From Haliotis cracherodii (taxonomy: Eukaryota), in NCBI RefSeq assembly GCF_022045235.1, contig NW_027266297.1, forward strand, positions 44,950,001 to 45,014,000: DNA of 64,000 bases, written 5' to 3'. Position 1 is the stretch's first letter, and each line of letters begins with the position of its first letter. The position numbers and the translations under genes are program-made. The notes under the pieces were generated by a model that was given only the letters and a program-made list of their open reading frames with translations, had not been told where the DNA came from and made no database searches. This document shows positions 600 through 60,001 of this stretch, piece after piece.

Positions 600-3500
600 C
601 TGAACTTGATACCCTGCGACACGTCGTAACCAGCTGGTACCTTCCAGGTGAACATAACTGACGTCTTCTTAAATTCACTTGTGTGGGTGATGGAGTTCTA
701 GGAATGAAAACACAAAACACGATACCCATCTTTGTTCAACGTTTCATTCTCTGTATGTTTGTTGAATCGTTGAGGTCAGAAGAAATTTCAATAAGATTCA
801 ACCAAGCCTTTGAAAACGTCACTGTGCTTATTAGGGCAACCAAACGTTATTGTGCTTCTTAGGGAAACCATAGTCTGAACACGTTACTGTGCTTATTGTG
901 GCAACCATACTTTGAACAAGTTACTGTGCTTCGTAGGGCAACCAGAGTTTGAACACGTTACTGCGCTTCTTAGGACAACAATACTTTGAACACGTGAATG
1001 TGCTTATTAGGGCAACAATACTTTGAACAAGTTATTGTGCTTCTTATGGCAACCAGAGTTTGAACACGTGAATGTGCTTATTAGGGCAACAATACTTTGA
1101 ACACGTGAATGTGCTTATTAGGGCAACAATACTTTGAACAAGTTATTGTGCTTCTTAGGACAGCCAGAGTTTGAAAACGTATACGTTTGGACGTATATCT
1201 CTTATGGACAATGTTACACATTACTGTGATTCTTAGGGCAACCATACTTTGAAAATGTTACTGTGCTTCTTGAATACAATAATTGTTGCAAACATACCTT
1301 GGTGACATTTAAACAGTCCATGGTTTGAATAGTACCATCCGAGGCGGTATACTTGGCAAATGTCCCGGGCACTATGGCAGTGTCGGCGGTGGTACACTTG
1401 GTACAGCGGGCTTGGACCAGGAAACCCTCGAAGTATCCGTCGGTGGCAGTTGCGTTCAGGGTGACTGAAATATACAAGACACATACAGAGTAATACGAGA
1501 GAGGCACCATCGTGGCAACCAAAAGCTTTCAGGTTAACATTTGATCTGATTATTAAGTCAAATCTGCGTAGACAGGTAGAACTTTTACAAATCCAACTTT
1601 TTTGGTGGATACTAAAAAATATAATCAAAGTTTATTTTAGCTAGCATGAATATTATAAAATATTAAGCAAGTCTAAGCTTATAATTCCCTCTACTCCTGC
1701 TAAAGGTCCTGATTTTGGCTTGGGTACATTTAGTCTGTCTCACATTCGCTGAACCATATCATTTTCCCTTCAGCTAAGCCCTTCTGTAATGCAAATGCCC
1801 TTGAAGAATGTCTAGATTTTCCTTAGGAATCTCCCATCTCACTGGATCTCCGTTTCAATTAAGGCGTTAATCTAGGGTACATTCCTGTATACTGAAATGT
1901 TCCTGGGTTACATATCTGTAGTACCCGTGACTACACGACATCTTCAGTTCTACTCCCCCATGCGGTTGATCCACCAGCCTGCTCTTTTTTACCCTGTTCC
2001 CCACAGTATTGCGAACAAATGTGATTTGAGTGTCAAGTCGTCAGAGATCACATACGGTCGGGGTGTCAGAGAAGATGTAAATTTTGAACAGCCAGGTATG
2101 AAATGTTAGTCGGGTGGCCAGAGGTGATGTACGTAACTTTGAGTAGCAAGGGATAATACGACATAAAATGACAAACACTTAACCGTCAATTATGGGGCAG
2201 TTCAGTAGGCGCATACTGTGTATCTAGCTCCACAGAGAAAACACACTGTCAACATGTTTATCTTCATTCTACCATGAAAAAAACATTAAACTGTTAGCAA
2301 AGAGACTGGGTGAAGCGGCAAGGGACTAGTCGACTATTTTCAATGGGTTGCCGATCTGAATTAACGGACCACTGATGATAGACTTCGAAGAAAGAATTAA
2401 GGGGACCAGGTACAGAGTGAATGAAGGGGTCTCGGTATGGAGTGAATGAAGGGGCCCGGTATGGAGTGAAAGAAAGGGTCCTGGTATGGAGTGAATGAAG
2501 GGGACCCGGTATGGAGTGAATGAAGGGGTCCCGGTACGGAGTGAATGAAGGGGTCCTGGTATGGAGTGAATGAAGGGGACCCGATACGCAGTGAATGAAG
2601 GGGTCCAGGTATGGAGTGAATGTAGGGGTCTCGGTATGGAGTGAATGAAGGGGCCCGGTATGGAGTGAAAAAAGAGGTCCCAGTATGGAGTGAATGAAGG
2701 GGTCTCGGTTTGGAGTGAATGAAGGGGGCCCGGTATGGAGTGAATGAAGGGGGCCCGGTATGGAGTGAATGAAGGGGTCCTGGTATGGAGTGAACGAAGG
2801 GGTCCCGGTATGGAGTGAATGAAGGGGCCCGGTATGGAGTGAATGAAGGGGCCCCAGTATGGAGTGAATGAAGGGGTCCCAGTACGGAGTGAATGAAGGG
2901 GTCCTGGTATGGAGTGAATGAAGGGGTTCTGGTATGGAGTGAAGGAAGGGGGCCCGGTATGGAGTGAATGAAGGGGGCCCGGTATAGAGTGAACGAAGGG
3001 GGCCCGGTATGGAGTGAAGGAAGGGGTCCCGGTATGGAGTGAACGAAGGGGTCCCGGTATGGAGTGAATGAAGGGGGCCCGGTATGGAGTGAATGAAGGG
3101 GGCCCGGTATGGAGTGAATGAAGGGGCCCCAGTATGGAGTGAATGAAGGGGTCCCAGTACGGAGTGAATGAAGCGGTCTCGGTATGGAGTGAATGAAGGG
3201 GTTCTGGTATGGAGTGAAGGAAGGGGGCCCGGTATGGAGTGAATGAAGGGGGCCCGGTATAGAGTGAAGGAAGGGGGCCCGGTATGGAGTGAACGAAGGG
3301 GTCCCGGTATGGAGTGAATGAAGGGGGCTCGGTATGGAGTGAATGAAGGGGGTCCGGTATGGAGTGAAGGAAGGGGTTCTGGTATGGAGTGAATGAAGGG
3401 GGCCCGGTATGGAGTGAATGAAGGGGGCCCGGTATGGAGTGAATGAAGGGGGCTCGGTATGGAGTGAATGAAGGGGTCCTGGTATGGAGTGAATGAAGGG

Positions 3501-5061
3501 GTTCTGGTATGGAGTAAATGAAGGGGTTCTGGTATGGAGTGAATGAAGGGGGCCCGGTATGGAGTGAATGAATGAATGAATACGTATATTGCATCTAAAT
3601 TTCAATAAGACTCCACGGATATATTGATATTTACCTTTAACCATCTCTTTTGCGTCAAAATTGCCAACAGGAATAATTCGAAGCTATCTGATCTTATCTA
3701 TAATGTCTTTTGAGTAACGCTAAGGATAACACAAAAATCAACAGAACAAAGGACTGTATTTCTTGCATTTATGACACTTTTATTACAACGGGCAATAATA
3801 TCTTTTGAATTGACCAATTGTTTGTAAAAAAAATAAATGGCCTTATCATAATAATATCGAATAATCTTAGAGACCTATATATTATAAAAATGGAATTCTG
3901 ACCTGGAACATCGAGGAAAAGCAGATTCTACAAGGCAATTGTAAATTATCCACCAAATTCATCTGATAAATGGGAAACTAGTTTGGTTCGTTTCAAATTT
4001 TCTCTGATGAAGCAGGTAGAAGGCAGAACATTACTCTCATAAAAAGAAAATGTATATTATGTCTATCAAGTGGTACTGCAGATGAATATCATTATTTGTT
4101 TAATTGTGTGTATTTCAATGAAACAAGAAGTTTCCTATCTCCTTCTTACATGAACCTACTATCAGTTCTCTACATGACCAAGTTATTTCTAAGTAGGTAA
4201 AACATATAACTTCTGTCGCCACAATACATTTAACTTCACATTTAACATTCAGACTTGAGAATTGTAAACTTCATGAGAGAATAATACTTCAACATTCTGC
4301 TTTAATTTGAGAAGTGGAAATCAGGTGTTGAGATAAACAATTACACCTTGATCTTTTTATGAGACTAGCGGGAGTATCAGTTGTGCAGTCATAGATGAAA
4401 TATCATCTACAGACGAGTTCATAACCTGACAAAAGTTTTCTCATGTCAGTACAATGTTTTGACGCATATACTTCGTTACCATATGTTCTCGTGTTTTTTA
4501 GGTGAACAATTGACTCGCCTTTGCTTGTGTTTGTGACATGTGTGGGGCAGAATACGCTCACCTTTTCGCGAACACCAAAGTGATTCATAAAAGCACATGC
4601 CCATGATGTAGTCGGAATCGTACACTCGCCTCTACTACGAGAAGAGATTTCTTATTAATATGGAAAGGGTTTTGTTTGGCGAAAGGTTTGTCATGTGAGA
4701 ACAGTGTCATTCTCCTTCCTGAAAGCCACCAGAAGTTGTTATACTTTGCTCTAACGTGTAGGAATTCTTATGAATACGGAAAGGGTCACAGCCAAAAAGG
4801 TTTCCGTTTTCAGGAAACCTTCCAGATACCTTTCCACTTTTAATAGGGCCTTATCTTACAGAAATTACCTGTAACCATCCCTCCCTGTTTGATGGAATTT
4901 GTCTCTACGAAGAGAGAGTATGGCGGCGTTGAGTTCTGGGCGATGGTACCGTCATGTTGAGGAGTGAGGTTGATGCAGGCTGGAGGTCCTGCTGCTGTAG
5001 AGTAGCCCAGGACTAGAGCGGGCTGGACACAGGCGATAAGGAGGACGATGTACGCAGCCAT
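600..5061 (-). CDS. Reeler-domain protein, paralogue A (partial; last exon lies left of the window). Coding exons 5061-4869, 1464-1298, 697-600
   Basis: Manual splicing with canonical GT-AG sites (phases 1,0,2) gives MAAYIVLLIACVQPALVLG-YSTAAGPPACINLTPQH...PPYSL...VTLNATATDGYFEGFLVQARCTKC...PGTF...MDCLNVTK-NSITHTSEFKKTSVMFTWKVP...IKFR. This is a signal peptide plus the Reeler motifs C..(M/L).P.H, F.GF..QAR, C...N..TH and W.(A/V)P. Confidence 0.9.
808..1270. repeat. ~37-bp minisatellite (TTTGAACACGTTACTGTGCTTATTAGGGCAACCATAC-like) in intron 2 of gene A
   Basis: Direct tandem copies, ~11 units; not amplified in the paralogous intron of gene B. Confidence 0.85.
2400..3580. repeat. ~25-bp minisatellite (GGTATGGAGTGAATGAAGGGGGCCC) in intron 1 of gene A
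   Basis: ~47 tandem units ending in (TGAA)n; explains the spurious 415/422-aa ORFs. Confidence 0.95.
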
Positions 5062-7731: not shown

Positions 7732-7830
7732 CTTCGAGTTCTTTCAGACTACAGTCTAACAGCGTCGCCAGTGTGCGGGACCCAGTAGTGACTGTGATGC
7801 CAGCTCCTGAACCGGAACACGACCCAGTTT
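7732..7830 (-). other. Putative non-coding 5' UTR exon of gene A (upstream boundary approximate)
   Basis: The ATG at 5061 is immediately preceded by an acceptor (ttctag). This block ends in the donor AAG|GTCAGT and is conserved at 21669-21770 (gene B) and 40580-40670 (gene C). Confidence 0.6.
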
Positions 7831-11416: not shown

Positions 11417-11810
11417 GGCCACTGTTGTCGTCAATGAAACTCATTGGTGGGACAATATTCCTTCTGGGTATCTCCATGAGAAACGAGATGGGGAGACAAC
11501 ACAACGTTGGACCATGTGGACATCTTGTGTGCTGTGTTGTCCTTATACGGATACCATATTAACCTTGGAATCTTTTGTGCTGTTTTGTCCTTATATAGAT
11601 ACCATGTTAACATTGGAATCTTGTGTGCTGTGTTGCCTTTATATTGATACCATGTTAACATTGGAATCTTGTGTTCTGTGTTGTCCTGATATTGATACCA
11701 TGTTAACATTGGAATCTTGTGTGCTGTGTTGTCTTTATACTGATACCATGTTAACCTTGGAATCTTGTGTGTTGTGTTGTCCTAAAACAGGTGCCATGTT
11801 AACATTGTAA
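11417..11810 (+). pseudogene. Orphan inverted Reeler last-exon homologue reading into the 48-bp satellite
   Basis: Polypyrimidine acceptor ttcttctcctccag|G GCC ACT GTT GTC gives (R)ATVVVNETHWWDNIPS, with the same phase and motif as exon 4 of B/C/D (ATVVQ....WW....S). Confidence 0.65.
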
Positions 11811-14235
11811 TCCTGTGCGCTTTGTTGTCTTTATACTGACACCATGTTAACATTGGAATCGTTTGTGCTGTGTTGTCTTTATACTGACACCATGTTAACA
11901 TTGGAATATTGTGTGCCGTGTTGTCTTTATACAGATACCATGTTAACATTGGAATTTTGTGTGCTGTGTTGTCTTTATACTGATACCATGTTAACATTGG
12001 AATATTGTGTGCCGTGTTGTCTTTATACTGATACCATGTTAATATTGGAATCGTGTGGGCTGTGTTGTCTTTATACTGGAACCATGTTAACATTGCAATT
12101 TTGTGTGCTGTGTTGTCCTTATACAGATACCATGTTAACATTGGAATCTTGTGTGCTGTGTTGTCATTATATAGATACCATGTTAACATTGGAATCTTGT
12201 GTGCTGTGTTGTCATTATATAGATACCATGTTAACATTGGAATCTTGTGTGTTGTGTTGTCATTATATAGATACCATGTTAATATTGGAATCTTGTGTGC
12301 TGTGTTGTCCTTATATAGATACCATGTTAATATTGGAATCTTGTGTGCTGTGTTGTCTTTATACTGATACCATGTTAACATTGGAATCTTGTGTGCTGTG
12401 TTGTCATTATATAGATACCATGTTAACATTGGAATCTTGTGTGTTGTGTTGTCATTATATAGATACCATGTTAATATTGGAATCTTGTGTGCTGTGTTGT
12501 CATTATATAGATACCATGTTAACATTGGAATCTTGTGTGCTGTGTTGTCATTATATAGATACCATGTTAACATTGGAATCTTGTGTGTTGTGTTGTCATT
12601 ATATAGATACCATGTTAATATTGGAATCTTGTGTGCTGTGTTGTCATTATATAGATACCATGTTAATATTGGAATCTTGTGTGTTGTGTTGTCATTATAT
12701 AGATACCATGTTAACATTGGAATCTTGTGTGCTGTGTTGTCATTATATAGATACCATGTTAACATTGGAATCTTGTGTGTTGTGTTGTCATTATATAGAT
12801 ACCATGTTAATATTGGAATCTTGTGTGCTGTGTTGTCATTATATAGATACCATGTTAACATTGGAGTCTTGTGTCCTGTGTTGTCATTATATAGATACCA
12901 TGTTGATATTGGAATCTTGTGTGCTGTGTTGCCTTTATACTGATACCATGTTAACATTGGAATCTTGTGTGCTGTGTTGCCTTTATACTGATACCATGTT
13001 AACAGTGGAATCGGGGCGGTCGGGTAGCCTGGTGGTTAAAGTGTTCGCTCGTCACGCCGAAGACCCGGGTTCGATTCCCGACATGGGTACAATGTGTGAA
13101 GCCCATTTCTTGTGTCCCCCGCCGTGATATTGCTGGAATATTGCTAAAAGCGGCGTAAAACCAAACTCACTCACTCACTCACTCACTAATATTGGAATCT
13201 TGTGTGCTGTGTTGTCTTTATACTGATACTATGTTAACATTGGAATATTGTGTGCTGTGTTGTCCTTATATAGATACCATGTTAATATTGGAATCTTGTG
13301 TGCTGTGTTATCTTTATACTGATACCATGTTAACATTGGAGTCTTGTGTGCTGTGTTGCCTTTATATTGATACTATGTTAATATTGGAATCTTGTGTGCT
13401 GTGTTGTCCTTATATAGATACTATGTTAATATTGGAATCTTGTGTGCTGTGTTGTCTGTATACTGATACCATGTTAACATTGGAATATTGTGTGCTGTGT
13501 TGTCCTTATATAGATACCATGTTAATATTGGAATCTTGTGTGCTGTGTTATCTTTATACTGATACCATGTTAACATTGGAGTCTTGTGTGCTGTGTTGCC
13601 TTTATATTGATACTATGTTAATATTGGAATCCTGTGTGCTGTGTTGTCCTTATACTGATACCATGTTAACATTGGAATCTTGTGTGCTGTGTTGTCCTTA
13701 TACTGGAACCATGTTAACATTGGAATCTTGTGTGCTGTGTTGTCCTTATATAGATACCATGTTAACCCTGGAATCTTGTGTGTTGTGTTGTCTTTATACT
13801 GATACCATGTTAACATTGGAATCTTGTGCGCTGTGTTGTCCTAATATAGATACCATGTTAACATTGGATTCCTGTGTGCTGTGTTGTCTTTATACTGATA
13901 CATGTTAACCTAGGAATCTTGTGTGCTGTGTTGTCTTTATACTGATACCATGTTAACATTGGAATCTTGTGTGCTGTGTTGTCCTAATACAAAAACCATG
14001 TTAATATTGGAATCTTGTGCGGTGTGTTCTCCGTATACTGATACTATGTTAATATTGGAATCTTGTGTGCTGTGTTGTCCTAATATAGATACCATGTTAA
14101 CATTGGAGTCTTGTGTGCTGTGTTGTCTTTATACTGATACCATCTTAACATTGGAATCTTGTGTGCTGTGTTGTCCTTATACTGAAACCATGTTAATATT
14201 GGAATCTTGTGTGCTGTGCTGTCCTTACACTGAAC
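11510..14235. repeat. 48-bp satellite array 1 (GATACCATGTTAACATTGGAATCTTGTGTGCTGTGTTGTCTTTATACT), interrupted by a SINE
   Basis: ~53 tandem units; same unit as the array at 24828-28918. Confidence 0.97.
13013..13187 (+). mobile_element. tRNA-derived SINE (family 1) inserted in the satellite
   Basis: A box TAGCCTGGTGG, B box GGTTCGATTCC, tRNA-Asp-like GTC loop, (CACT)n tail; near-identical copies at 41462 and 52393. Confidence 0.9.
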
Positions 14236-15931: not shown

Positions 15932-16954
15932 CTACAGGAAGAGAGCAGCAATGATGGAGCCAATGACAACAGCCGTCGCCGATGCGGACCGTGAGCAGCT
16001 GCTGGTCGTGACGCTGATCTCGTCAGACATCACCGTGTTCCACCATGTTCGTAGATTCTGGACAACTGTAGCCCTGGAACATAATGGGACATTTACAAAT
16101 GGAGCGACATAAAGACTCGCCACCACATGTTTAGGTCATTAGGTCCAGCACAAGACATAGGTTGATTTTCTGTCCCAACAATCATGCTTATATGGCGCGC
16201 AGAATATTGTATGCATTAGCAGAATAGAGAGTTCGCGTTTCATTCTGGCACGGTAGAATTGAGATACGTAATTTTGATTTTGATTTTGAAATTTTCAATG
16301 TAATGGTAGAAAAGACGTTTATCTCTTATGGACAGTGTTACACAATCACTTATATTCATATTCATATTCAGTAATTTTCACAGCTTGTTTGACCTTTACG
16401 CCATTTTGGAATCTGTTTCGGCGGATAATCTAGCCTGGTTATTCTCTTACATTGACGTTATATATTTAACGTACCTGAACTCGATGCCCTGTGACACGTC
16501 GTAACCACCTGGTGCCTTCCAGGTGAACATAACTGACGTCTTCTCAGTTGCATTTGTGTGGGTGATGGAGTTCTGAGAATGAATGATGTGTCAACAGCTG
16601 GACGTGTTACGTGTAAAATTCGTAAACTTTCGAAAATATTACTATGATCCGGGCAACCGTACTTTATATACAATAACTGCGAACTTGAAAACCTACCTTG
16701 TCGCCACCTGCACAGTTTTTGGTTTGAATAGTACCATCCGAGGCGGTATACTTGGCAAATGTCCCGGGCACTATGGCAGTGTCGGCGGTGGTACACTTGG
16801 TACAGCGGGCTTGGACCAGGAAACCCTTGAAGTATCCGTTGGTTGCAGTTGTGTTCAGGGTGACTGAAATATACAACACACATACAGAGTAATACGAGAG
16901 AGGCACCATCTAGCAAACAAAAGCTTTCAGGTTAACGTTTGATCTGATTATTAG

Positions 16955-17036: not shown

Positions 17037-19169
17037 GAGAGGGGGTGGGGGGGTGGGGGGGCCTACAACAACAACAATGGTTCTGGTTGGTATCAAATGA
17101 AAGTGGAATTCATTTAAGTCCAGTGAAAAGTATTATCACATGGTCAGATTTTATGGACGTTGACTTTTTCAGATATTTTTAACAAAGCTCAATTTTAACA
17201 GCTCAATCGTTTAGGTGTATGAGTGTCAAGTCGTTAGAGATCACCTCCGGTCTGGAATTCCTTGGGGACACAACTTTAGGCAGGCAGCTATAACATGTAG
17301 ATCAAGAGACTGAAGTGAAGCGGCAAGCGCTTAGTCCACAGATAATAGTCTTTAGAGAAAGAAGAGCCCCCTATATGCTTGAATACTGTTTTTTAACACC
17401 AGTCTTCCTTACTCGCATATATGGCAGTCCTGGGAAGTGCAGCTGCATCTACCTGGTAAGACTACATGTAGGGGACTGATTAAACACGCCTTGCCTGGTT
17501 TAGTTTTACTCCCTGGGCACTATCATGACGTCATATCACTCATTGTGACACATAAGATATGTCATGACGTAACTGTCGTATTTTCACACATACAAGTACT
17601 TCTATCCTCAGCGGTGATGCAAACCAGTTGTTACACTAAGCGGTTTTTGTATGATTTGAAACCTCTGAATAGACCAATCAGAATTAAGAATTTTACAAAT
17701 TCATGATAGAATAATAATTCAATATTTCTGCAATCAGTCACCCTGCATAAATTTGAGAAGAGGAAATGAGGTGTTAAGATAAACGATTATACCTTGACCT
17801 TTTTATGAGACAAGCACGAGTAGCAGTTGGGGAGTCATGGATGAAATATTATCTACAGACGAGTACACACTTGCAGATCTGTTTCTTTAAGCGCACGAAT
17901 CGGAACATCTGATCGGATTGGCTAATTCGAAACAAGGCAAATTTGCCAACAAGTTTAACTTAAGCTTTAGGGATATCGATGATACGAAAATCGTTCAATG
18001 ACGGTCAAACAGCCAAGTGAACTGATTTACCCACCTGGGTCCACTTGCACAAAGCGATCTTAGCACTAAGACTATCGTTCACCTATGTTAAAGTATGGAA
18101 GTTACGAACGTCTTAGCGCTAAGATCGCTTTGTGCAAGTGGGCCCAGATCTTCTATGGGGACAAAAGAGGCTCGTGAAACTGTCTTATCTATTTCATATT
18201 TAAATGTTTGCATACGGATTCAGAGCGACAATAATTCTTATTATCGAACAATATTCCAGCAGCTCCAGCCTTTGGTGTCTACATTTCACAACTGTTGAGG
18301 TACAATCGATCATGCTCAGTATTGGAAGATTTCAAAGATCATCAAACGACTCTTGTTAAAAAAGCTTTCAAGAGGTATTATGGTAGACATGTGGAGAACA
18401 TTTCCAAATTTGACGCCTCAGTGACCAAATGGTGTCCGATGCCATTCCTTGTTTGGACTTGTACCACGTGTTCCTGTGTTGTTGTTTCTCAGGCATGTGT
18501 CTGTGACGGGAGCCCCTTTCGCGAACACCTGGTATGATCAGTATCATAAATAAACGATGCGTAACACAACGATGCTCTCTGCCATGACTAATTTTATAAG
18601 CTTTCAACATTCCATACCCTCCACAGTTATATAAAAAATACTCACCTTTTGGCAAACACATGGCATCAACACTATTTGATAGTGATTCATAAACACATGC
18701 TCATGATATATTCCAAGTCGTACAATGTCTTATGAATCAAAACATTATGGAAAGAGTGTGGTCGCTTTTATTGGCGAAATATTTGTTATGTGAATACAGC
18801 GTTATTCACCTTCGTTAAAACCCCCAGAAGATGTTTTGTTTTACTCGAACGTGCATGTAGCCTGACTGTATCGACATCTTGTTGTCAGATATTTACATAT
18901 GTGTAGGAGAACTACCACAAATGTTGATAACGTCGTAAACTCATAACGCTGAAGCATGTGACGCATGCGGACTTACCTGTAACCATCCCTCCCTGTTTGA
19001 TGGAATTTGTATCTACGAAGAGTGAGTATGGCGGCGTTGAGTTCTGGGAGATGGTACCGACATGTTGTGGAGTGAGGTTGATGCAGGCTTGATCTCCTGC
19101 TCCTGTAGGGTAGCCCAGGACCAGCACGGGCAGGACACAGGCGATAAGGAGGACGATGTACGCAGCCAT
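15932..19169 (-). CDS. Reeler-domain protein, paralogue B, 199 aa, signal peptide and probable GPI anchor. Exons 19169-18977, 16863-16697, 16572-16475, 16073-15932
   Basis: Four GT-AG exons (193+167+98+142=600 nt) splice into an intact ORF ending ...RATVVQNLRTWWNTVMSDEISVTTSSCSRSASATAVVIGSIIAALFL*. Confidence 0.93.
16958..17040. repeat. (GA)n microsatellite
   Basis: Direct observation. Confidence 0.95.
18035..18147. mobile_element. ~110-bp palindromic MITE (same family as 6501-6612)
   Basis: Long inverted repeats CTGGGTCCACTTGCACAAAGCGATCTTAGC / GCTAAGATCGCTTTGTGCAAGTGGGCCCAG. Confidence 0.85.
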
Positions 19170-24827: not shown

Positions 24828-27800
24828 ACTGACACCATGTTAACATTGAAATCTTGTGTGCTGTGTTGTCCTTATACTGATACTCTGTTAACATTGGAAT
24901 CTAGTGTTCTATGTTGTCTTTGTACTGACACCATGTTAATATTGGAATAGTGTGGGCTGTGTTATCTTTGTACTGATACCATGTTAATATTGGAATAGTG
25001 TGGGCTGTGTTGTCTTTATACTGATACCATGTTAACATTGGAATCTTCTGTGCTGTGTTGTCCTAATACTGATACCATGTTAACACTGGAATAGTGTGTG
25101 CTGTGTTGTCTGTATACTGATACCATGTTAACACTGGAATAGTGTGGGCTGTGTTGTCTTTATACTGATACCATGTTAACATTGGAATCTTCTGTGCTGT
25201 GTTGTCCTAATACTGATACCATGTTAACACTGGAATAGTGTGGGCTGTGTTGTCTTTATACTGATACCATGTTAACACTGGAATAGTGTGGGCTGTGTTG
25301 TCTTTATACTGATACCATGTTAACACTGGAATAGTGTGGGCTGTGTTGTCTTTATACTGATACCATGTTTACACTGGAATAGTGTGGGCTGTGTTGTCTT
25401 TATACTGATACCATGTTAACACTGGAATAGTGTGGGCTGTGTTGTCTTTATACTGATACCATGTTTACACTGGAATAGTGTGGGCTGTGTTGTCCTGATA
25501 CTGATACCATGTTAACACTGCAATAGTGTGGGCTGTGTTGTCTTTATACTGATACCATGTTAACACTGGAATAGTGTGGGCTGTGTTGTCTTTATACTGA
25601 TACCATGTTAACACTGGAATAGTGTGGGCTGTGTTGTCTTTATACTGATACCATGTTCATACTGGAATAGTGTGGGCTGTGTTGTCTTTATACTGATACC
25701 ATGTTAACACTGGAATAGTGTGGGCTGTGTTGTCTTTATACTGATACCATGTTAACATTGGAATAGTGTGGGCTGTGTTGTCTTTATACTGATACCATGT
25801 TAACACTGGAATAGTGTGGGCTGTGTTGTCTTTATACTGATACCATGTTAACACTGGAATAGTGTGGGCTGTGTTGTCTTTATACTGATACCATGTTTAC
25901 ACTGGAATAGTGTGGGCTGTGTTGTCCTGATACTGATACCATGTTAACACTGGAATAGTGTGGGCTGTGTTGTCCTGATACTGATACCATGTTAACACTG
26001 GAATAGTGTGGGCTGTGTTGTCTTTATACTGATACCATATTAACACTGGAATAGTGTGGGCTGTGTTGTCCTGATACTGATACCATGTTAATATTGGAAT
26101 AGTGTGGGCTGTGTTGTCCTAATACTGATACCATGTTAACACTGGAATAGTGTGGGCTGTGTTGTCCTGATACTGATACCATGTTAATATTGGAATAGTG
26201 TGGGCTGTGTTGTCCTAATACTGATACCATGTTAACACTGGAATAGTGTGGGCTGTGTTGTCTTTATACTGATACCATGTTAACGCTGGAATAGTGTGGG
26301 CTGTGTTGTCCTGATACTGATACCATGTTAACACTGGAATAGTGTGGGCTGTGTTGTCTTTATACTGATACCATGTTTACACTGGAATAGTGTGGGCTGT
26401 GTTGTCCTGATACTGATACCATGTTAACACTGGAATAGTGTGGGCTGTGTTGTCTTTATACTGATACCATGTTAACACTGGAATAGTGTGGGCTGTGTTG
26501 TCTTTATACTGATACCATGTTAACACTTGAATAGTGTGGGCTGTGTTGTCCTGATACTGATACCATGTTAACACTGGAATAGTGTGGGCTGTGTTGTCTT
26601 TATACTGATACCATGTTAACACTGGAATAGTGTGTGCTGTGTTGTCTTTATACTGATACCATGTTAACACTGGAATAGTGTGGGCTGTGTTGTCTTTATA
26701 CTGATACCATGTTAACACTGGAATAGTGTGGGCTGTGTTGTCCTGATACTGATACCATGTTAACACTGGAATAGTGTGGGCTGTGTTGTCTTTATACTGA
26801 TACCATGTTAACACTGGAATAGTGTGGGCTGTGTTGTCTTTATACTGATACCATGTTAACACTGGAATAGTGTGGGCTGTGTTGTCTTTATACTGATACC
26901 ATGTTAACACTGGAATAGTGTGGGTTGTGTTGTCTTTATACTGATACCATGTTAATATTGGAATAGTGTGGGCTGTGTTGTCTTTATACTGATACCATGT
27001 TAACACTGGAATAGTGTGGGCTGTGTTGTCTTTATACTGATACCATGTTAACACTGGAATAGTGTGGGCTGTGTTGTCTTTATACTGATACCATGTTAAC
27101 ACTGGAATAGTGTGGGCTGTGTTGTCTTTATACTGATACCATGTTAACACTGGAATAGTGTGCGCTGTGTTGTCCTGATACTGATACCATGTTAACACTG
27201 GAATAGTGTGGGCTGTGTTGTCTTTATACTGATACCATGTTAACACTGGAATAGTGTGGGCTGTGTTGTCTTTATACTGATACCATATTAACACTGGAAT
27301 AGTGTGGGCTGTGTTGTCTTTATACTGATACCATGTTAACACTGGAATAGTGTGTGCTGTGTTGTCTTTATACTGATACCATGTTAACACTTGAATAGTG
27401 TGGGCTGTGTTGTCTTTATACTGATACCATGTTAACACTGGAATAGTGTGGGCTGTGTTGTCTTTATACTGATACCATGTTAACACTGGAATAGTGTGGG
27501 CTGTGTTGTCTTTATACTGATACCATGTTAACACTGGAATAGTGTGGGCTGTGTTGTCTTTATACTGATACCATGTTAACACTGGAATAGTGTGGGCTGT
27601 GTTGTCTTTATACTGATACCATGTTTACACTGGAATAGTGTGGGCTGTGTTGTCTTTATACTGATACCATGTTAACACTGGAATAGTGTGGGCTGTGTTG
27701 TCTTTATACTGATACCATGTTTACACTGGAATAGTGTGGGCTGTGTTGTCCTGATACTGATACCATGTTAACACTGGAATAGTGTGGGCTGTGTTGTCTT

Positions 27801-31899: not shown

Positions 31900-32037
31900 T
31901 GGGATGGTGGGTTTGCCTAGCCGTTAAAGCGTTCACTCGTTACGCCGTAAGTACGGCTTCGATTCCCTATATTGTACAATGTGTGAAGCCCATTTCTGGT
32001 GTCCGCCTCCGTGATAAAACCACCCTCACTTACTCAC
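31900..32037 (+). mobile_element. Degenerate SINE (family 1)
   Basis: Shares GTACAATGTGTGAAGCCCATTTCTGGTGTCC and a decayed tRNA head. Confidence 0.75.
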
Positions 32038-33473: not shown

Positions 33474-35728
33474 TTATGCGAGCAGTGAAGAGACGACGAC
33501 ACTAAAACTGATAATGAGAGCCAGCAATGGAGCAGCTTGAGTGGTAGAGTTGGGTGCAGCGGTGGTGACGGTGATCTCTTGGGACAGCACGTTAGTCCAC
33601 CAGGTCGCTTTCACTTGGACAATAGTAGCCCTGGAATATACAGGTCATTTGAAACACGTCTAGCGATCAGCCTGTACTGCGTCACCAAGGTAAAGGGAAA
33701 TCACTGGACCTGACACATCCCTGAGAAGGAACTATTTCCCATGCTGTTGTCTTTCTTGCCATTACAAAAGACGGAATGCGATCAGCGGGTTTGGGAATAC
33801 AGAATATCATACCATGTGTCCTACAGAATATCATACCATGTGTCCTACAGAATATCATACCATGTTTCCTACAGAATATCATACCATGTTTCCTGCAGAA
33901 TATCATACCATGTGCCCTACAGAATATCATACCAAGTGTTCTACAGAATATCATTTCAAGTTTCCTACAGAATATCATACCATGTGTCCTACTGAATATC
34001 ATACCAAGTTTCCTACAGAATATCACACCATGTGTCCTACAGAATATCATACCAAGTGTCCTACAGAATATCATACCAAGTGTCCTACAGAATATCATAC
34101 CAAGTGTCCTACAGAATATCATATAAAGTTTCCTACAGAATATCATACCAAGTGTCCTACAGAATATCATACCAAGTGTCCTACAGAATATCATACCAAG
34201 TGTCCTACAAAATATCATACCATGTGTCCCACAGAATATCATACCAAGTGTCCTACAGAATATCATACAAGTGTCCTACAGAATATCATACCAAGTGTCC
34301 TACAGAATATTATACCAAGTGTCCTACAGAATATCATACCAAGTGTCCTACAGAATACCATACCATGTGTCCTACAGAATAGCATACCATGTGTAACACG
34401 GAATAGCCTACAAAGTGTCAATCAAAACATTACAAGTGTCCTACAGAATATCGTGTCTTACAAGATATCATAAGCGTTCTACAGAGTATCCTGTCCTAAT
34501 GAAAATCATGACTATCACATCAAGTGTCCTAATGAAAATCATGACTATCACATCAAGTGTCCTACGGAAAATCATGACTATCACATCAAGTGTCCTACGG
34601 AATATCATGACTATCACATCAAGTGTCCTACGGAATATCATGACTATCACATCAAGTGTCCTACGGAAAATCATGACTATCACATCAAGTGTCCTACGGA
34701 ATATCATGACTATCACATCAAGTGAGTTTCTGCTATGTATATGCACACATCTGAGTGGGTTGCACAGAAATCACATACCTGAACTGAACGCCTTGGGAAA
34801 CATCATAATCCGAGGGTGCTGTCCAGGTGAACATGACAGTTGTCTTCATACTACTACTGGTATGAGTCATCGAATTCTGAAAATAGAATACACCAAAATG
34901 CATGAAATAGTTGTGTTAAACTGCAATACGGATGACTTATCAGTGGATACTGTCAAAAACGCCATGGCTATCATCATCATTTTACAATCTATAGGTCCTC
35001 TTAAATGAGCCCTGTGATATAGATGCTAGGATTCAGTTCATAAAGAATGAGTTCAAGCTACAGACAAACCTTGGCAATATTTGCGCAGTCCATGGTTTTA
35101 GTATCATCCGCGGCGGTATACTTGGCAAAAGTCCCGGGCACTATGGCAGTGTCGGCGGTGGTACACTTGGTACAGCGGGCTTGGACCAGGAAACCTTTGA
35201 AGTATCCGTTGGTGGCAGTTGCGTTCAGAGTAACTGAATAATTAGGAAATGTCACCTGCAATTAGCCTGTAAGTTATTTTACNNNNNNNNNNNNNNNNNN
35301 NNNNNNNNNNNNNNNNNNNNNNNNNNNNNNNNNNNNNNNNNNNNNNNNNNNNNNNNNNNNNNNNNNNNNNNNNNNNNNNNNNNNNNNNNNNNNNNNNNNN
35401 NNNNNNNNNNNNNNNNNNNNNNNNNNNNNNNNNNNNNNNNNNNNNNNNNNNNNNNNNNNNNNNNNNNNNNNNNNNNNNNNNNNNNNNNNNNNNNNNNNNN
35501 NNNNNNNNNNNNNNNNNNNNNNNNNNNNNNNNNNNNNNNNACCATCCCGCCTTGTTTGATGGATGTGGTATCCGCTGTGAGGGTGTAAGGATGTGGTGAT
35601 GTGTTTGCGGTGGTTCCGTCGTGATGAGGCTTGAGATCCAGGCAAGCAGAGGCACCAGCTCCATCTTGGTAACCCAGAACCATCACCGGCAACACACAGA
35701 CGATGAAGAGGAATACATGCACGGCCAT
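33474..35728 (-). CDS. Reeler-domain protein, paralogue C, ~203 aa, probable GPI anchor. Exons 35728-~35536 (end in N gap), 35233-35070, 34876-34779, 33630-33474
   Basis: MAVHVFLFIVCVLPVMVLG-YQDGAGASACLDLKPHH...; GFLVQARCTKC; NSMTHTSSSMKTTVMFTWTAP; ATIVQVKATWWTNVLSQEITVTTAAPNSTTQAAPLLALIISFSVVVSSLLA*. All visible splice sites are canonical. Confidence 0.9.
33795..34722. repeat. 24-bp minisatellite (GTCCTACAGAATATCATACCAAGT) followed by a related 33-bp array, intron 3 of gene C
   Basis: ~25 units to ~34400, then ~7 units of GTCCTACGGAATATCATGACTATCACATCAAGT at 34490-34722. Confidence 0.93.
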
Positions 35729-54665: not shown

Positions 54666-57600
54666 CTATGCATTGAAATGCCGCAGTAATTGAGCAGTGA
54701 AAGCAAGAAACAACACAGCCCTCTCCTGACCGTGGTTTGTCGCTGTTGAACCATATGGATAGACGGATATGGTCTGTCGGGCAGGACAATAGCTGTACAT
54801 TCTAGTGCTATTCTGACTTGAATCATAAACAGTGTTACTCTGCACATTGGCCCAGAAGATGTCGCGCCTCTTCACTATGGTTGCCCTGCAATTGTAAAAA
54901 AATCATTTTCTGAGTACTCACGGAATTGGATGTTAGAACGTTCAGAGCTGTGACATGAACTGCCTCAAAACTGAACAGCCCGAGATACACAACTTCCCGC
55001 ACACGTGGTGGTATCCAGGTTATTAATTCCACCCGTTATGTGATACACGAGCAGATAGGTAGAATTGCCTTCCCCTATACAAATGTTGGTAAGAACAATC
55101 CTTTATCAGATGTTGTCCTCGTGTGTGTTAATACCCGAGTTATTGACTCACAGTGGTCGGACTTCTGCCTTTCTCACAGCAGTATGTCACGCATATATAT
55201 ACGGTACAGTCACGCATATATACGGTACAGTCACGCACATCTGAGGCTTGTATATGCAGGAATACTCTGCATTTTCAAGAAATAATAATTTAACGTATTT
55301 TGCAAACTCTACATTGGCTTTCGCTGAAACAGGGCAAGTGTTTTGGACAGGGACAGTGGGGTCTCTAGCAAGCGAAAACTCATAAAAAGAAATGAAAACG
55401 ACACAAGATTACCTCAGTCGAGATGAAATCATAACTGGGTCCCTATTTCTAGTTCACTAAAAGGAGGATATATTTTTAAGTACATTTACTAAACACGTAG
55501 GTTTCACTCGAACAGATATCGTTGATACTATGCACACTAGTTGATGAAGGTTACACAACTCATCAAGTTGTGCATACTCTAAAAACACTTAACACAGGAT
55601 CTCAGGATCTAAGGATCCATGTGAACATTAAGCCAAAATAGGTTTCCAGCACCCTATGTTTGCCAAAGGAAAGCAGACTACAATGTGCGACCTGGCAGAT
55701 TGTGTGTCATCCTACCCGATGGTGTGGACCTTGATCGCGTGATCTACCTCTGCTGTGTATGGCCGAGACAATTTCGGACCGTGATCCAACTGAAATAGTC
55801 ACTCCGATGATATGCAGCACTTACTGAAAGTAGACGTCTCCTCCATTGGGGTTCCTCCAGGTAACAGTGACTGATGTCTTCCTACTGGGGCTGGTGTGGG
55901 AAACAGCGTTCTGCAATATCAGGAACAGTCACTTTAACCACTCAAGTGTTTCCATTTCAACCATACAAGTAAAATTAAATAATAGACATCAGCCCAAACA
56001 TGTTTTTGAATACTCGATTTCTTAACAATGTCTTCATTTAGCTGTGATGATTACAGCAGCATGCAAGAGTCGTTCCAACTTCTAAACATGTTAAAACCTC
56101 TAACGGAAAAGAAACGCTTTCAGGACGTAAAACACGTTGCACAGTGCAATAGGTACTTCACTGCCGTAGTAAATTAAAGAATAGGTATGAACAATGTTTG
56201 TATTTGTATGGAAAATGTTAGAACTGGCGCATTTCAGACGTTATGGAAATGAAATTTGGGGATCTTCATTCAGAGAAAGTATAGAAAAAGTCCAAAGATT
56301 TTTTTCAAGAGATATCGATTAATCAGTAGTAAAGCATCCTCTAATACTGTTCTTGGTGAGTTTCATTGTTATCATCTAAGTGTTAATTATTTCAGTGTAT
56401 TGGTGTAGGCTAATACGCATGAATTCCAATGGACTTCCACTTGTTTGTTATCAAAAGATGATAATGGTAGGGTTAATTTTGCATCTCATGTGAGAATGCT
56501 TTAGTTTAAACAAGGCTTTGATTATGCTTGGATATCCGGATTGTGGAGATATACGTTACTTTATGGAAATAAGAGAAAATGTATTGACATTGATGTGCAG
56601 AACGGGAGTCAAAGTATTAGCAAGTCTATGTTCTTAAACCATTAATTGTCTTATAAAGCACTGCTAGAAACTGATAAAGATCAATTAGACTATTGGCGAA
56701 ATTTGGATGTTTAGCACATGATTAAAACATACAAAAACAGCGTTTTAGCAAACCGTGACCTCTCTAACTGGCTGAACCAGGTGCAAGGTCACATTTTAGT
56801 TATATTAGCAGGTTGTGTCTTATCTTTTCAGGTTATTGCAGAAAATCCAGTTTAAATGTAGATTAGCGTAAAGGAGAAAAACACTGAGGATTCAGACAGT
56901 GGTTGTGGCAAAACCATGCTTCAGGTTTCATATGTATCTTTATTCCACAATAACAATCATGTACACGTTCTTACGTCTTGAAATAACATAAGCGTCTACA
57001 TTGCTTCCCCCAGTCATTCGTTGATTTGCAATACGTACATTTGAGATCGGCCCCATGCATGTCATGCTCTGGGTGTTGGAGTCCAAAGGGCCAACAAAGA
57101 AACCCCTGGCAACGGTTGAGGACATGCAGTCAGCGCTATGTGCCTGGAGGAAAAACCCTTGAAAGTATGGATGATCCGTGTTCGTTGTTGATATGGTAAC
57201 TGAAACAATCATTATCAGCCACAATGTAGACGGTGTCATATGAAATCATTACATTTTATATAATTAGCCATCTTGATTTCGCGGGACTACATGTACACAA
57301 GAGTTTTTATATGAAATAATGCAGTAGGCCATAATATTTTATAATATTACATCATGTAATGTTTAGTGTTATCTTTGCGAAAAACCAGTGCGATAAATTT
57401 TATGTCACGACCCGAGAAATATGCAAATGAGTACAGCGAGCAGGAACTACTTGTGGGCCCCGTACATCGATGCAGTGTCTGCTTGATCAGTAACTGATTG
57501 ACTAACATTTGCAACAAGTTTAGGTGGGAGTTTCCTGATGCGTGGGTCATTCTGTAGACAGCCCTGACTGTAAATAATTTGGTGCTATATGATAAACGGG

Positions 57601-60001
57601 TCTGTTCACGCATACATTGTATTCATTTTAACCATTAAACGGTTTCTAAAGTTACTTCTTGGAGTGACAAAACGTCGATCATTTTAGAATGATGTTATAT
57701 GATAAAAGAAGTATTACATTCGTGTATTTCTGTATGGTAAATATCATACGTTAGACATAAGTATAAGTTTGACGGTTTAAAATAAGCGTAAACAACAACA
57801 AACAAAAAAACAAATAAATAAAACGAAAAAGAACCCCAAACAAATCTCTTGTCAATCTCATTAAAAATAGATCTCAGTGCTCGCTACCGCTAAACAAAGA
57901 TCTGAGGACATCCTGTCACAGCTTACGTCAGCACGACCATTCACCCGACCTTCAGCAAGTACGAAGTGGTCTCAATCTCATTAAAAGCAGTCGCTAAACA
58001 AAGATCTGAGGACATCGCATTAAGCGTCACGTCAAAACGACCTATCATCCAACCAATCAGCACTTACCAGATCATGAAAGTGTTTTCTAATCATGCAACC
58101 ACGAAATATTTAACATTGAGTATTCCGAACGACAGTTACGGGTTTTATGATCATATCAATACAATCTAGGTCATCTATAAGCCATTCCAGAATATTCTTC
58201 TTATCAGTTTTAATTTTTTTAATTGAGAATACGTCAAAATATGTTTCGAAGCGAAGTAACCAGTTTGAAAGTAGTGTCGTAAAGCTCGAGAAAACTGCCT
58301 TCTGATTGGCTAATGTCGATTTCTTGTCGGTCATTTCATTGGTCGGTCAAAATTCGCGAAAGGTCGTGCTGACCTGACCCGTAATGGGATGTCCTCAGAT
58401 CTTTGATTAGCGGTAGCGAAAACTCAGACCTGATTTTGATGAGATTGGAAGTGGTCTCTAATTATCCTATCTTGAAAGTGTCAACGCTGTACGACTGTTT
58501 CCTTCAAAATCACCGTCTATATCTCGCTTGAATTGGATAAACATTTGAAACGGATGAGACTTTCCAATAGCACGCGGGAAGTACTGCCATACAATCTCGG
58601 CCATCTATTAGACATTTCAGAATTTTCTTCTGTTCAATTTTCAAATTTTGAATTGAGAGCTCTTTCAAAATTTTTCTCAAGGCAACGTTTAGAATGAAAG
58701 CCGCCATTTTGAACTAGCACCGTAAAGCTCAAGAATTATGCTTATTGATTGGTTAATGTTGACGTCGTCTTACTCATTTCATTAGTCGGTCAATGTTCGC
58801 GAAAGGTCATTCTGTCGTAACCCTTAATGGGATGCCCTCAGATCTTTGCGTTGGCGTAGCGTGTACAAAGATCTGATTTTAATTAGATTGATTTCAACGG
58901 TGATCAACTTCAACGGTGATTTTGTATGCCGAATTTTAAAAATAACCGTACAGCTGTGTACTAGCCAATAAGACACACAATCTCTGGATGGCGTGTAATA
59001 AAATGTCCTATCAACTTAACTAGGCAAGATTAGTGTATATGATAGGTGATAAAGTGGCTACCGCTCACCGGTAATGTTGTCGTCGGTGGGTGTGTAGCTA
59101 GGGTTGTCAACAGTGATCACATAGGGCGGGGCACTCATCTGGGCATCAGCCCCGTGGTGAGGGAACATGTCTCCACACGCCGACAGAGGAGGCCCGGTGC
59201 TGTATCCCTGTGTCAGATGCAGGGAACAAATGGCCAACACAACTGCAACAATCTGAAATAGATTCATCATTTAAAATGTGACCATATTACTGATCTAAAA
59301 ACGGCAAACAAATCCGTCCGAAGACAAAATTACAGAAACGTGTAGATACACGAAACAATGCATTGAGGTTTCATCGTGTTAAACAGAAAAGAGACATCTC
59401 TTCGAGGAACAAGTGTTTCTACTGATAAATTGCCAAACCGTGCTTAGAAGAACAACGTCATGAGGTTTAAGCTGGTCAACCAGTCCAGACTTAATGGTTA
59501 CCAGGCAAGAGTAGCACAGCCCTGACGTATTGCTAAGTAACTGTTTTAAGTATTACAACACTGAGTTGACATACGTCACACCTATATGGTTAGGGTTCCA
59601 ATTATTTTATTTGTCTTACATATACAAACAACATCAATATTCATGTCAATTACATAAATTCATGTTTGCTTGTTGTTTAACGCCGCACTCAGCAACAATC
59701 CAGCTATAGACGGCGGTCTGTAAATAATTGAGTCTGGACCAGACAATCCAGTGATTGACATCATGAGCATCGACCCACGCAATTGGGATACGATGACATG
59801 CATCACCCAAGTCAGCATTCACGGGTCTATAAATTCATGTACAAAACAAATGTAAGTTAGTCGCACTGGACTCGGAGTTGTTTGTAGAATACCTCATTAA
59901 GTAATCAGCCGAAACACTGACGTGAGTTAGATATATGTTATAGCTTTTACGAATATTTTTCACTTACATTTAAATAACCATAAAACATGTACCTGAAACA
60001 T
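54666..60001 (-). CDS. Reeler-domain protein, divergent paralogue E, ~219 aa. Exons 60001-59993 (MFQ; alternative start ATG at 59270), 59252-59069, 57199-57039, 55910-55825, 54885-54666
   Basis: IVAVVLAICSLHLTQG-YSTGPPLSACGDMFPHHGADAQMSAPPY; YFQGFFLQAH...GFF...MTC; NAVSHTSPSRKTSVTVTWRNP; QATIVKRRDIFWANVQS. Same intron phases as A-D. Confidence 0.88.
57853..58890. mobile_element. Nested AcademH-like non-autonomous elements with RecQ-helicase fragment; inner copy 57973-58447
   Basis: Two left ends CAATCTCATTAAAA...CAAAGATCTGAGGACATC and two matching right ends; inner copy flanked by 10-bp TSD GAAGTGGTCT; ORF 58510-58707 LKIEQKKILKCLIDGRDCMAVLP resembles a RecQ N-terminus. Confidence 0.7.
59665..59828 (-). 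mobile_element. SINE (family 3) fragment
   Basis: TGTTTAACGCCGCACTCAGCAA...CTGTAAATAATTGAGTCTGGACCAGACAATCCAGTG. Confidence 0.8.

What the first reader, a model, noticed from the sequence alone, without database searches (positions are those of the whole stretch)
1344..1426. 83-nt exon-2 tract almost nucleotide-identical across four diverged paralogues
Seen: 1344-1426 (A), 16743-16825 (B), 35113-35195 (C) and 47153-47235 (D) differ by at most 2 nt, including at synonymous positions (encoding GFLVQARCTKC(T/S)TADTAIVPGTFAKYTA). Exons 1, 3 and 4, and the end of exon 2, of C and D diverge strongly from A/B. Protein-level selection cannot explain frozen third positions. Inference: a recurrent gene-conversion tract homogenising a functional core while the flanks diversify, or an RNA/DNA-level constraint such as a splicing enhancer, small-RNA target or structure.
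Basis: partly seen in the sequence, partly recalled or inferred. Interest (0 to 1): 0.8.

Follow-up and report, generated by a model that had tools for sequence, protein, structure and literature searches.

The report
Gene-conversion core in abalone Reeler genes
Four neighbouring black-abalone genes for secreted Reeler-domain proteins keep an 83-base stretch of exon 2 almost identical, most likely because the copies overwrite each other there (gene conversion) in a protein segment that never changes; this is a clear but ordinary case of concerted evolution.

Summary
The four 83-nt tracts differ by 0-2 nt and are the only copies in the 1.18-Gb genome. The genome is Haliotis cracherodii. The tracts lie in exon 2 of four tandem minus-strand Reeler-domain genes, RefSeq 'putative defense protein 3'. 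Outside exon 2, paralogue types A/B, C and D are old. Synonymous differences per site (pS) are 0.59-0.71, and each type has orthologues in H. rubra and H. asinina. In the core only 1-2 of about 22 synonymous sites differ (P 1e-6 to 6e-11).

Best explanation: short ectopic gene conversions confined to exon 2, seeded and bounded by a 27-aa block that is invariant in all Haliotis homologues found.
- The non-conserved exon-2 flanks of C versus A/B also have low pS.
- The Ser variant in the core is shared by A and B in H. rufescens but sits only in D here.
- C's 5' flank is B-like and unlike its own orthologue.

No RNA structure, Rfam family, intronic complement or conserved antisense ORF was found. 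The scan noted a similar exon core in another gene cluster of this genome (s1-847929). Ordinary concerted evolution; modest interest.

The parts
1344..1426 (-). 83-nt near-identical core, paralogue A
16743..16825 (-). 83-nt core, paralogue B (identical to A)
35113..35195 (-). 83-nt core, paralogue C (1 synonymous difference, ACT instead of ACA)
47153..47235 (-). 83-nt core, paralogue D (ACT, plus AGC Ser instead of ACC Thr)
1298..1464 (-). exon 2 of A (phase 1 start, AG/GT borders); Reeler profile positions 38-85
16697..16863 (-). exon 2 of B
35070..35233 (-). exon 2 of C; low pS against A/B over its whole length; an N run begins 50 nt upstream in the gene's sense (35283)
47107..47273 (-). exon 2 of D; only columns ~30-119 of its in-frame part are homogenised
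4869..5061 (-). exon 1 of A (signal peptide plus start of the Reeler domain). A's exon 4 lies outside the window, at -348..-195
600..697 (-). exon 3 of A
18977..19169 (-). exon 1 of B
16475..16572 (-). exon 3 of B
15932..16073 (-). exon 4 of B (Ser/Thr-rich stretch plus hydrophobic tail, then stop)
35541..35728 (-). exon 1 of C, its 3' end cut off by the N run 35283-35540 (left unfilled)
34779..34876 (-). exon 3 of C
33474..33630 (-). exon 4 of C
48079..48268 (-). exon 1 of D
46827..46924 (-). exon 3 of D
44962..45109 (-). exon 4 of D
54705..59249 (-). divergent fifth paralogue E (exon matches at about 59097-59249, 57054-57200, 55833-55910 and 54705-54884); it lacks the core and the CxxC motif and serves as the within-cluster contrast

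Best explanation
The window carries a tandem cluster of five Haliotis cracherodii genes for small secreted Reeler-domain proteins. Each has a signal peptide, a Reeler domain and a hydrophobic C-terminal tail (by eye), and four exons on the minus strand. Paralogue types A/B, C and D separated before H. cracherodii/rufescens, H. rubra and H. asinina diverged. A 27-28-residue block in exon 2, GFLVQARCTKC[T/S]TADTAIVPGTFAKY, is under near-absolute protein-level purifying selection. Because that block keeps the paralogues most alike, it is the one place where heteroduplex can still form between them. Short ectopic (interlocus) gene conversions therefore keep occurring there and erase synonymous differences. 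These events are about 90 nt long with D and up to the whole 165-nt exon between C and A/B. They cannot spread into the unalignable introns. Towards the 3' end they stop at a hypervariable loop, where amino-acid change is fast. Shown here: the frozen synonymous sites, the age of the paralogue types, the low synonymous divergence of non-conserved exon-2 flanks, and variants shared by paralogues but specific to a species. Inferred: the conversion mechanism itself, its recurrence, and the idea that the conserved core seeds and limits it.
For: (1) Core pS is 0.05-0.09 (1-2 of about 22 synonymous sites) against 0.59-0.71 in exons 1, 3 and 4; binomial P is 6e-11 (A-C), 1e-6 (A-D) and 1e-8 (C-D).
(2) Control for protein constraint: of columns with the same amino acid in A-D, 25/27 in the core have identical codons against 18/57 elsewhere.
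(3) Trees from exon 1 and from exons 3+4 place H. rubra and H. asinina proteins inside each of the D (99/99, 99/98), A/B (98/97) and C (93/89 on exon 1) groups, so the identity is not recent duplication.
(4) The exon-2 flanks vary in amino acids between species and paralogues, so they are not constrained. Yet they show pS 0.23 (A-C, P 6e-5) and 0.31 (B-C, P 2e-3). The D flanks are lower than background (0.40-0.48 against 0.59-0.63) but not significantly so. The homogenised span therefore differs from pair to pair.
(5) The Ser codon in the core is in D only in H. cracherodii but in both A and B of H. rufescens. A and B predate that species split, so without exchange this needs three parallel changes.
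(6) H. cracherodii C matches H. rufescens B at 13/13 residues of the exon-2 5' flank but its own orthologue at only 9/13, while those orthologues are 91-93% identical elsewhere.
(7) The B-type transcript of two other species labels carries ACT where H. cracherodii B has ACA, the same site that varies among paralogues here.
(8) Similarity ends within about 10 nt of the exon borders, and the genes are tandem and in the same orientation at 12-18 kb spacing.
(9) A 90-165-nt tract is within the usual size range of conversion tracts (my own knowledge).
Against: No nucleotide sequence from distant species (H. rubra, H. asinina) could be obtained. The classic test is therefore untested at the DNA level: paralogues alike within a species but different between species at synonymous sites. 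The species-specific shared variants rest on one amino-acid site plus one synonymous site. The direction of the C-flank event is unclear, because the C types of H. rubra and H. asinina also have DGYFK. The 3' limit of the frozen zone falls at the same place (about column 120) for all type pairs. That is what a fixed functional element would also give. For D, the core is significantly more conserved than D's own exon-2 flanks (P 1e-3 to 6e-5), which fits either a short tract or a constrained element. GC3 of the core (0.62-0.69) is only slightly above the flanks, so there is no clear GC-biased conversion signal.
Confidence: 0.72

Rival explanations
1. Nucleotide-level functional element. The 83 nt are conserved as RNA or DNA in their own right, for example a shared small-RNA target, a splicing enhancer cluster or a protein-binding RNA site. 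The invariance of the peptide would then be partly a by-product.
For: The frozen zone has the same 3' limit for all type pairs. For D it is sharply more conserved than D's own exon-2 flanks. The same 31-mers occur in runs of four organism labels and 10 studies. Contigs of two other labels carry an identical tract. The peptide is invariant across four named Haliotis species.
Against: There is no excess folding stability on either strand: z = +0.69, -0.52, +0.35 and +1.38. No Rfam family matched in the window. No complementary segment lies in the flanking introns or the 84-kb neighbourhood. Antisense ORFs are short and differ between copies, and the +2 sense frame has a stop in D. It does not explain the low pS of the unconstrained exon-2 flanks between C and A/B, nor the Ser variant shared by H. 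rufescens A and B. The other species whose DNA was seen appear closely related (about 91-92% protein identity for B orthologues), so their identical tract carries little weight.
Confidence: 0.14
2. No exchange at all. Protein-level purifying selection, together with strong codon preference or a local mutation cold spot, happens to keep the same codons.
For: The peptide block is invariant in every homologue found. GC3 of the core is somewhat higher than in the flanks.
Against: Other columns with the same amino acid in all four genes keep identical codons in only 32% of cases, against 93% in the core. The core uses a mix of codons ending in A/T and in G/C (ATA, CAA, TGT, TAT, TTT, GGT next to ACC, GCC, GTC), not one preferred set. 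It cannot explain the homoplasy at the Ser/Thr and Thr/Asn sites.
Confidence: 0.05
3. Assembly or polishing artefact. The identity was produced by consensus building across similar copies.
For: An N run lies 50 nt from C's exon 2. The source-sample run X2 is thin and did not cover D's own exon 2.
Against: The tract is shorter than a read and each copy has unique flanks. An independent Logan contig of the source sample carries the A/B-type tract with its flanks, and D's intron 1 is confirmed at 100% over 376 nt. Spliced cDNA contigs of other species labels carry the same tract. Independent assemblies of H. rufescens, H. rubra and H. asinina encode the same peptide block in several paralogues each.
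Confidence: 0.02

Closest known systems
Interlocus (ectopic) gene conversion and concerted evolution of tandem duplicates, as reviewed for duplicated genes in PMC3924837 and surveyed in Drosophila in PMC2588116 and PMC3924832
   Same: Tandem paralogues in the same orientation. A short tract has much lower divergence than the rest of the gene. Synonymous sites are erased. Variants are shared between paralogues. The review describes divergence between duplicates being kept low for a long time by frequent exchange of DNA fragments.
   Different: Here the homogenised span is very small (83-165 nt) and lies inside one exon of genes whose types are older than the split from H. rubra and H. asinina. 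It coincides with a protein block that is invariant across the Haliotis homologues found. It is flanked on both sides by fast-changing segments.
Exon-restricted conversion in vertebrate gene families (globins, MHC exon 2, RHD/RHCE, opsins); from my own knowledge, not checked here
   Same: Conversion tracts of tens to hundreds of bases are confined to coding sequence because the introns have diverged. The result is a mosaic of conserved and variable segments.
   Different: In MHC, conversion spreads diversity in the variable part. Here it appears mainly to keep the conserved part identical. No population data are available for these genes.
Concerted evolution of the tandem KRTAP1 genes (bioRxiv 10.1101/282418) and of abalone VERL repeats (the latter from my own knowledge)
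   Same: Within-genome repeats are more alike than expected from their age. VERL shows that concerted evolution is already documented in Haliotis.
   Different: Those cases homogenise whole repeats or whole coding regions, not a sub-exon core. The gene family is different.
Reeler-domain 'putative defense protein' / 'ferric-chelate reductase 1-like' proteins (Pfam PF02014); Reeler proteins in the Haliotis laevigata shell matrix proteome (PMC6003135)
   Same: Exons 1-3 match consecutive parts of the Reeler profile. The RefSeq products carry PF02014. [quoted passage not shown]
   Different: It was not shown that the shell-matrix entries are these particular genes. The CTKC-containing core was found only in Haliotis: 3 hits in 1.84 billion representatives, two of them Haliotis.

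Membership tests
Reeler domain proteins (PF02014) | Match to the Pfam Reeler profile | tested here: met
   Searched exon by exon. Exon 1 matches profile positions 1-35 (14.5 bits), exon 2 matches 38-85 (20.1 bits for A, 22.2 for D; cut-off 21), and exon 3 matches 88-111 (18.7 bits), collinear. The RefSeq products of these genes carry PF02014 in the precomputed table.
Reeler domain proteins (PF02014) | Secreted or extracellular context (signal peptide) | not tested
   A hydrophobic N-terminus (MAAYIVLLIACV...) and a hydrophobic C-terminal tail were seen by eye. No signal-peptide or GPI predictor was available.
Interlocus gene conversion / concerted evolution | A tract with significantly lower divergence, synonymous sites included, than the rest of the paralogues | tested here: met
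   Core pS is 0.05-0.09 against 0.59-0.71, P 1e-6 to 6e-11. Run-length permutation gives P <= 5e-5 to 5e-4.
Interlocus gene conversion / concerted evolution | Paralogues older than the species, so the identity is not recent duplication | tested here: met
   Protein trees of exon 1 and of exons 3+4 place H. rubra and H. asinina members inside the D, A/B and C groups.
Interlocus gene conversion / concerted evolution | Variants shared among paralogues within a species but differing between species | tested here: inconclusive
   Met at the protein level for one site: Ser in both A and B of H. rufescens, Thr in both of H. cracherodii. Supported by the B-like 5' flank of H. cracherodii C and by the ACA/ACT site.
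Interlocus gene conversion / concerted evolution | Tract end-points that differ between pairs (a mosaic) rather than one fixed block | tested here: inconclusive
   The 5' limit differs: the exon start for C against A/B, column ~30 for D. The 3' limit is shared at about column 120.
Structured or catalogued RNA element | Folding energy below shuffled controls, or a match to an Rfam family | tested here: not met
   z = +0.69, -0.52, +0.35 and +1.38. There were 0 Rfam matches in the window at gathering score.
Structured or catalogued RNA element | Compensatory base changes or a long-range complementary partner | tested here: not met
   No complementary segment longer than 14 nt lies in the window plus 10 kb on each side. 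Covariation is untestable because the tract hardly varies.
Small-RNA target or splicing enhancer | A matching small RNA, or an effect of synonymous recoding on splicing | not testable with these tools
   No small-RNA data or splicing assay were available.

The most novel reading that the evidence does not exclude
There are two forms. In the first, the 83-nt core is a functional sequence in its own right, such as a shared RNA-level regulatory site. In the second, it is a germline 'homology anchor' that lets the cluster exchange its two hypervariable exon-2 flanks between paralogues. That would be a cassette-shuffling device creating variety in a secreted defence or shell-matrix protein family, with the identical core maintained because it enables the exchange.
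Probability: 0.12. Interest if true: 0.65.

Novelty: new member of a known kind. Interest (0 to 1): 0.3.

Why it matters
It is a clean, small-scale example of how gene conversion and purifying selection reinforce each other. An invariant protein block preserves enough identity for conversion to continue for a very long time, while the adjacent loops diversify. For annotation and phylogenetics of abalone Reeler ('defense protein 3' / 'ferric-chelate reductase 1-like') genes, it means exon 2 should not be used to date duplications or assign orthology. It also marks a Haliotis-restricted, CxxC-containing 27-residue block as the functionally critical part of these proteins and hence a sensible target for experiments. 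A second cluster with a similar core noted in this genome (s1-847929) suggests such islands may be common in abalone tandem families.

Tried and rejected
- RNA secondary structure of the tract and of 141-nt exon segments, both strands: no excess stability.
- Rfam over the whole window: nothing.
- Intronic or nearby reverse-complement partner (editing-type duplex): nothing longer than 14 nt.
- Conserved antisense or alternative-frame ORF: antisense ORFs are at most 64 aa and differ between copies; the +2 sense frame has a stop in D.
- Extra copies or a donor fragment elsewhere in the genome: none, by DNA or by protein.
- GC-biased conversion signal: GC3 is 0.62-0.69 in the core against 0.50-0.58 in the exon-2 flanks, too weak to use.
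- Structure of the protein: the AlphaFold2 model on 13 sequences was poor (mean pLDDT 50.3) and was not used. The PDB sequence search gave only a chance hit at E = 0.76.
A metagenome scan with exon-2 peptide patterns gave no confirmed relative.
- Reads: the source-sample run was too thin to cover D's exon 2. The loose-end consensus for run X6 has agreement of only 0.67 over two contigs, so I drew nothing from it.
- Literature: no paper links Reeler genes with gene conversion or treats these abalone genes.
- Joined models: the exons of my own gene models were never joined for a search. Full-length comparisons used only database proteins returned by the searches.
Full report
**Observation**

81 of 83 columns are invariant. 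A and B are identical, C differs at one column, and D differs at two. A DNA search of the window's own 1.18-Gb assembly finds exactly these four places and no other. A protein search with the exon gives the same four. The tract is read on the minus strand and encodes GFLVQARCTKC(T/S)TADTAIVPGTFAKYT(A).

**What the genes are**

The window holds five tandem minus-strand genes of four exons each, A to E. All borders have AG/GT, and the reading frames end in stops.
- Searched exon by exon, exons 1, 2 and 3 match consecutive parts of the Pfam Reeler profile: positions 1-35, 38-85 and 88-111.
- Each product starts with a hydrophobic leader and ends in a Ser/Thr-rich stretch plus a hydrophobic tail (seen by eye).
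- An HMMER search of 1.84 billion representatives with the exon-2 peptide returned only three proteins. Two are abalone proteins.
- A word search with one of these returned 13 proteins, all named ones from Haliotis: rufescens, rubra, asinina and cracherodii. They are named 'putative defense protein 3' or 'putative ferric-chelate reductase 1'.
- The H. cracherodii entries sit on a contig of 73,386,740 nt, the length of the window's contig. The genome is therefore black abalone.
[quoted passage not shown] I could not show that they are these genes.

Full-length comparisons use database proteins only.

**How unusual the tract is**

Nei-Gojobori counts were made per exon.

| Comparison | Region | pS | Source |
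|---|---|---|---|
| A/B vs C vs D (type pairs) | exons 1, 3, 4 pooled | 0.59-0.71 (pN 0.27-0.30) | |
| A vs B (recent duplicates) | exons 1, 3, 4 pooled | 0.09 | |
| A-C | 28-codon core | 1 of ~22 synonymous sites differ, P 6e-11 | |
| A-D | 28-codon core | 2 of ~22 differ, P 1e-6 | |
| C-D | 28-codon core | 1 of ~22 differs, P 1e-8 | |

- Control for protein conservation: among columns where all four genes have the same amino acid, 25 of 27 in the core have four identical codons, against 18 of 57 elsewhere.
- Permuting match and mismatch positions gives P <= 5e-5 for the longest identical runs of A-C, B-C and C-D, and about 5e-4 for the pairs with D.
- The core uses a mixture of codons ending in A/T and in G/C, so codon preference is not the cause.

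**Age of the paralogues**

Protein trees were built from exon 1 and from exons 3+4, that is, without exon 2.
- They group the sequences by type, not by species.
- The D group (support 99/99 and 99/98), the A/B group (98/97) and the C group (93/89 on exon 1) each contain H. rubra and H. asinina members next to the Californian species.
- The types are therefore older than these species splits. Recent duplication cannot explain the identity.

**Tests of a nucleotide-level element**

- The tract and 141-nt exon segments fold no better than dinucleotide shuffles on either strand: z = +0.69, -0.52, +0.35 and +1.38.
- No Rfam family reaches its threshold anywhere in the window.
- No reverse-complement partner longer than 14 nt exists in the window plus 10 kb on each side.
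- Antisense ORFs are at most 64 aa and differ between copies. The +2 sense frame carries a stop in D.

None of this proves absence of function. It leaves that reading without positive support.

**Evidence that conversion is at work in this exon**

1. *Low pS in unconstrained flanks.* The exon-2 flanks vary in amino acids between paralogues and species, so they are not constrained. They still have low pS between C and A/B: 0.23 (P 6e-5) and 0.31 (P 2e-3). The flanks of D are lower than background but not significantly so (0.40-0.48 against 0.59-0.63).
2. *Different spans for different pairs.* The mismatch map shows C like A/B from the first base of the exon. D becomes identical only from column ~30. 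All type pairs diverge again at about column 120.
3. *Exon-limited similarity.* Similarity ends within about 10 nt of the exon borders, because the introns are unalignable.
4. *A variant shared by paralogues but specific to a species.* The one variable residue of the core is Ser only in D of H. cracherodii, but in both A and B of H. rufescens. A and B already existed before those species split. Without exchange this needs three parallel changes. The Thr/Asn site at the edge of the core is similarly scattered over types and species.
5. *A clustered replacement in C.* H. cracherodii C and H. rufescens C are 91-93% identical in exons 1, 3 and 4 and in the 3' flank. They match at only 9/13 residues in the exon-2 5' flank. 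There the H. cracherodii copy equals H. rufescens B at 13/13. The direction of this event is uncertain, since the H. rubra and H. asinina C types also end in DGYFK.
6. *A parallel case in H. rubra.* Two H. rubra proteins of different type share the first 47 residues of exon 2 and then diverge.

**Reads**

The tract's sampled 31-mers occur in runs of four coded organisms plus one metatranscriptome, across 10 studies. Reads were laid on D (46800-47838) at 80% likeness.
- Contigs of organisms C and D are spliced cDNA. Their loose end joins the exon-2 end ...GGTGGCGACATG to the exon-3 start AACTCCATCACC.
- These contigs are B-type and match the unnamed protein P0008.
- They carry the tract in the version of paralogue C, with ACT where H. 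cracherodii B has ACA.
- Run X6 (organism B) has very deep contigs over the tract, with both states at both variable sites.
- These species appear close to H. cracherodii (B orthologues are 91-92% identical in protein). Their identical tract therefore does not discriminate between conversion and constraint.
- The source-sample run was thin. It confirmed an A/B-type contig and 376 nt of D's intron 1 at 100%, but did not cover D's own exon 2.

**Artefact**

This reading is rejected for four reasons.
- The tract is shorter than a read and has unique flanks.
- Independent cDNA contigs carry it.
- Independent assemblies of three other species encode the same block in several paralogues.
- The N runs at 32925-33060 and 35283-35540 were left as they are. 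The second removes the end of C's exon 1 and lies 50 nt from C's exon 2, which is a caveat for that copy only.

**Mechanism proposed**

The block GFLVQARCTKC[T/S]TADTAIVPGTFAKY is invariant in every homologue found, while the rest of the proteins is 55-70% identical. Protein-level selection thus keeps this stretch the most similar between paralogues. That makes it the last place where heteroduplex can form. Conversions there are harmless, so they persist and erase synonymous differences, which in turn preserves the substrate for the next event. Tracts cannot run into the diverged introns. Towards the 3' end they meet a loop that changes fast. Even the recent duplicates A and B differ there by 9.5 nonsynonymous against 0.5 synonymous changes, which suggests diversifying selection. 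The conversion itself and its recurrence are inferred, not observed.

**Comparison with what is known**

This is concerted evolution by interlocus gene conversion, as described for duplicated genes in general (PMC3924837, PMC2588116, PMC3924832). It is unusual only in three respects:
- the island is small;
- it persists in paralogue types older than the species splits sampled here;
- it coincides with a Haliotis-restricted invariant block.

The scan has noted a similar exon core in another gene cluster of this genome (s1-847929). I did not check that note.

**Limits**

- The decisive comparison is synonymous sites of the core in H. rubra and H. asinina.
- The AlphaFold2 model was too poor to use.

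**Verdict**

Gene conversion layered on strict protein conservation is the best explanation (0.72). A nucleotide-level element remains possible (about 0.14). Interest is modest.

Noticed in passing
window 46499-46837: A 75-nt x 4.5 minisatellite in intron 3 of D. Its unit contains the last bases of exon 3 plus the donor site (AGTTCAG|GTATGTTCAG), so the intron starts with several tandem copies of a potential 5' splice site.
   Followed up: partly
window 45108-45391: A 40-nt x 7 minisatellite that begins exactly at the acceptor of D's exon 4.
   Followed up: no
window 780-1290 and 2380-3570: Two long minisatellites in introns 2 and 1 of A, with units of about 37 nt and about 30 nt (GGTATGGAGTGAATGAAGGGG...). 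They are absent from the matching introns of B.
   Followed up: no
window 11417-14233 and 24828-28929: Large arrays of a 48-nt satellite, 84-91% alike, on either side of gene B. An inverted, orphan exon-4-like reading frame (ATVVVNETHWWDNIPS) lies at 11418-11465 (+) next to the first array.
   Followed up: partly
window 13011-13184, 41462-41632, 52392-52554 (inverted), 31906-32016: A repeat of about 165 nt, present three times at 95-97% identity and once at about 80%. It is probably a fragment of a mobile element.
   Followed up: no
window 47640-47838: Part of D's intron 1 is a very high-copy repeat. Thousands of contigs from both the DNA run and the presumed RNA run pile up on it.
   Followed up: no
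window ~7757-7828 (-); proteins P0001, P0007, P0012: RefSeq isoforms link neighbouring units. H. rufescens P0001 starts with an alternative first exon whose counterpart lies upstream of A's exon 1 in this window. H. rubra P0007 combines a C-type exon 1 with B-type exons 3-4. This suggests read-through or intergenic splicing between tandem paralogues, or annotation chimeras.
   Followed up: partly
window 1298-1343 and 16697-16742 (3' flank of exon 2 in A and B): Between the recent duplicates A and B this 15-codon segment has 9.5 nonsynonymous but 0.5 synonymous differences (pN 0.27, pS 0.05). It is a hypervariable loop, possibly under diversifying selection.
   Followed up: partly
window 54705-59249: The fifth paralogue E has the Reeler exons but neither the frozen core nor the CxxC motif: GFFLQAHSADCMSS instead of GFLVQARCTKCTTA. 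This agrees with note s1-841794.
   Followed up: partly
window 32925-33060 and 35283-35540: Two N runs. The second removes the 3' end of C's exon 1 and most of its intron 1.
   Followed up: no
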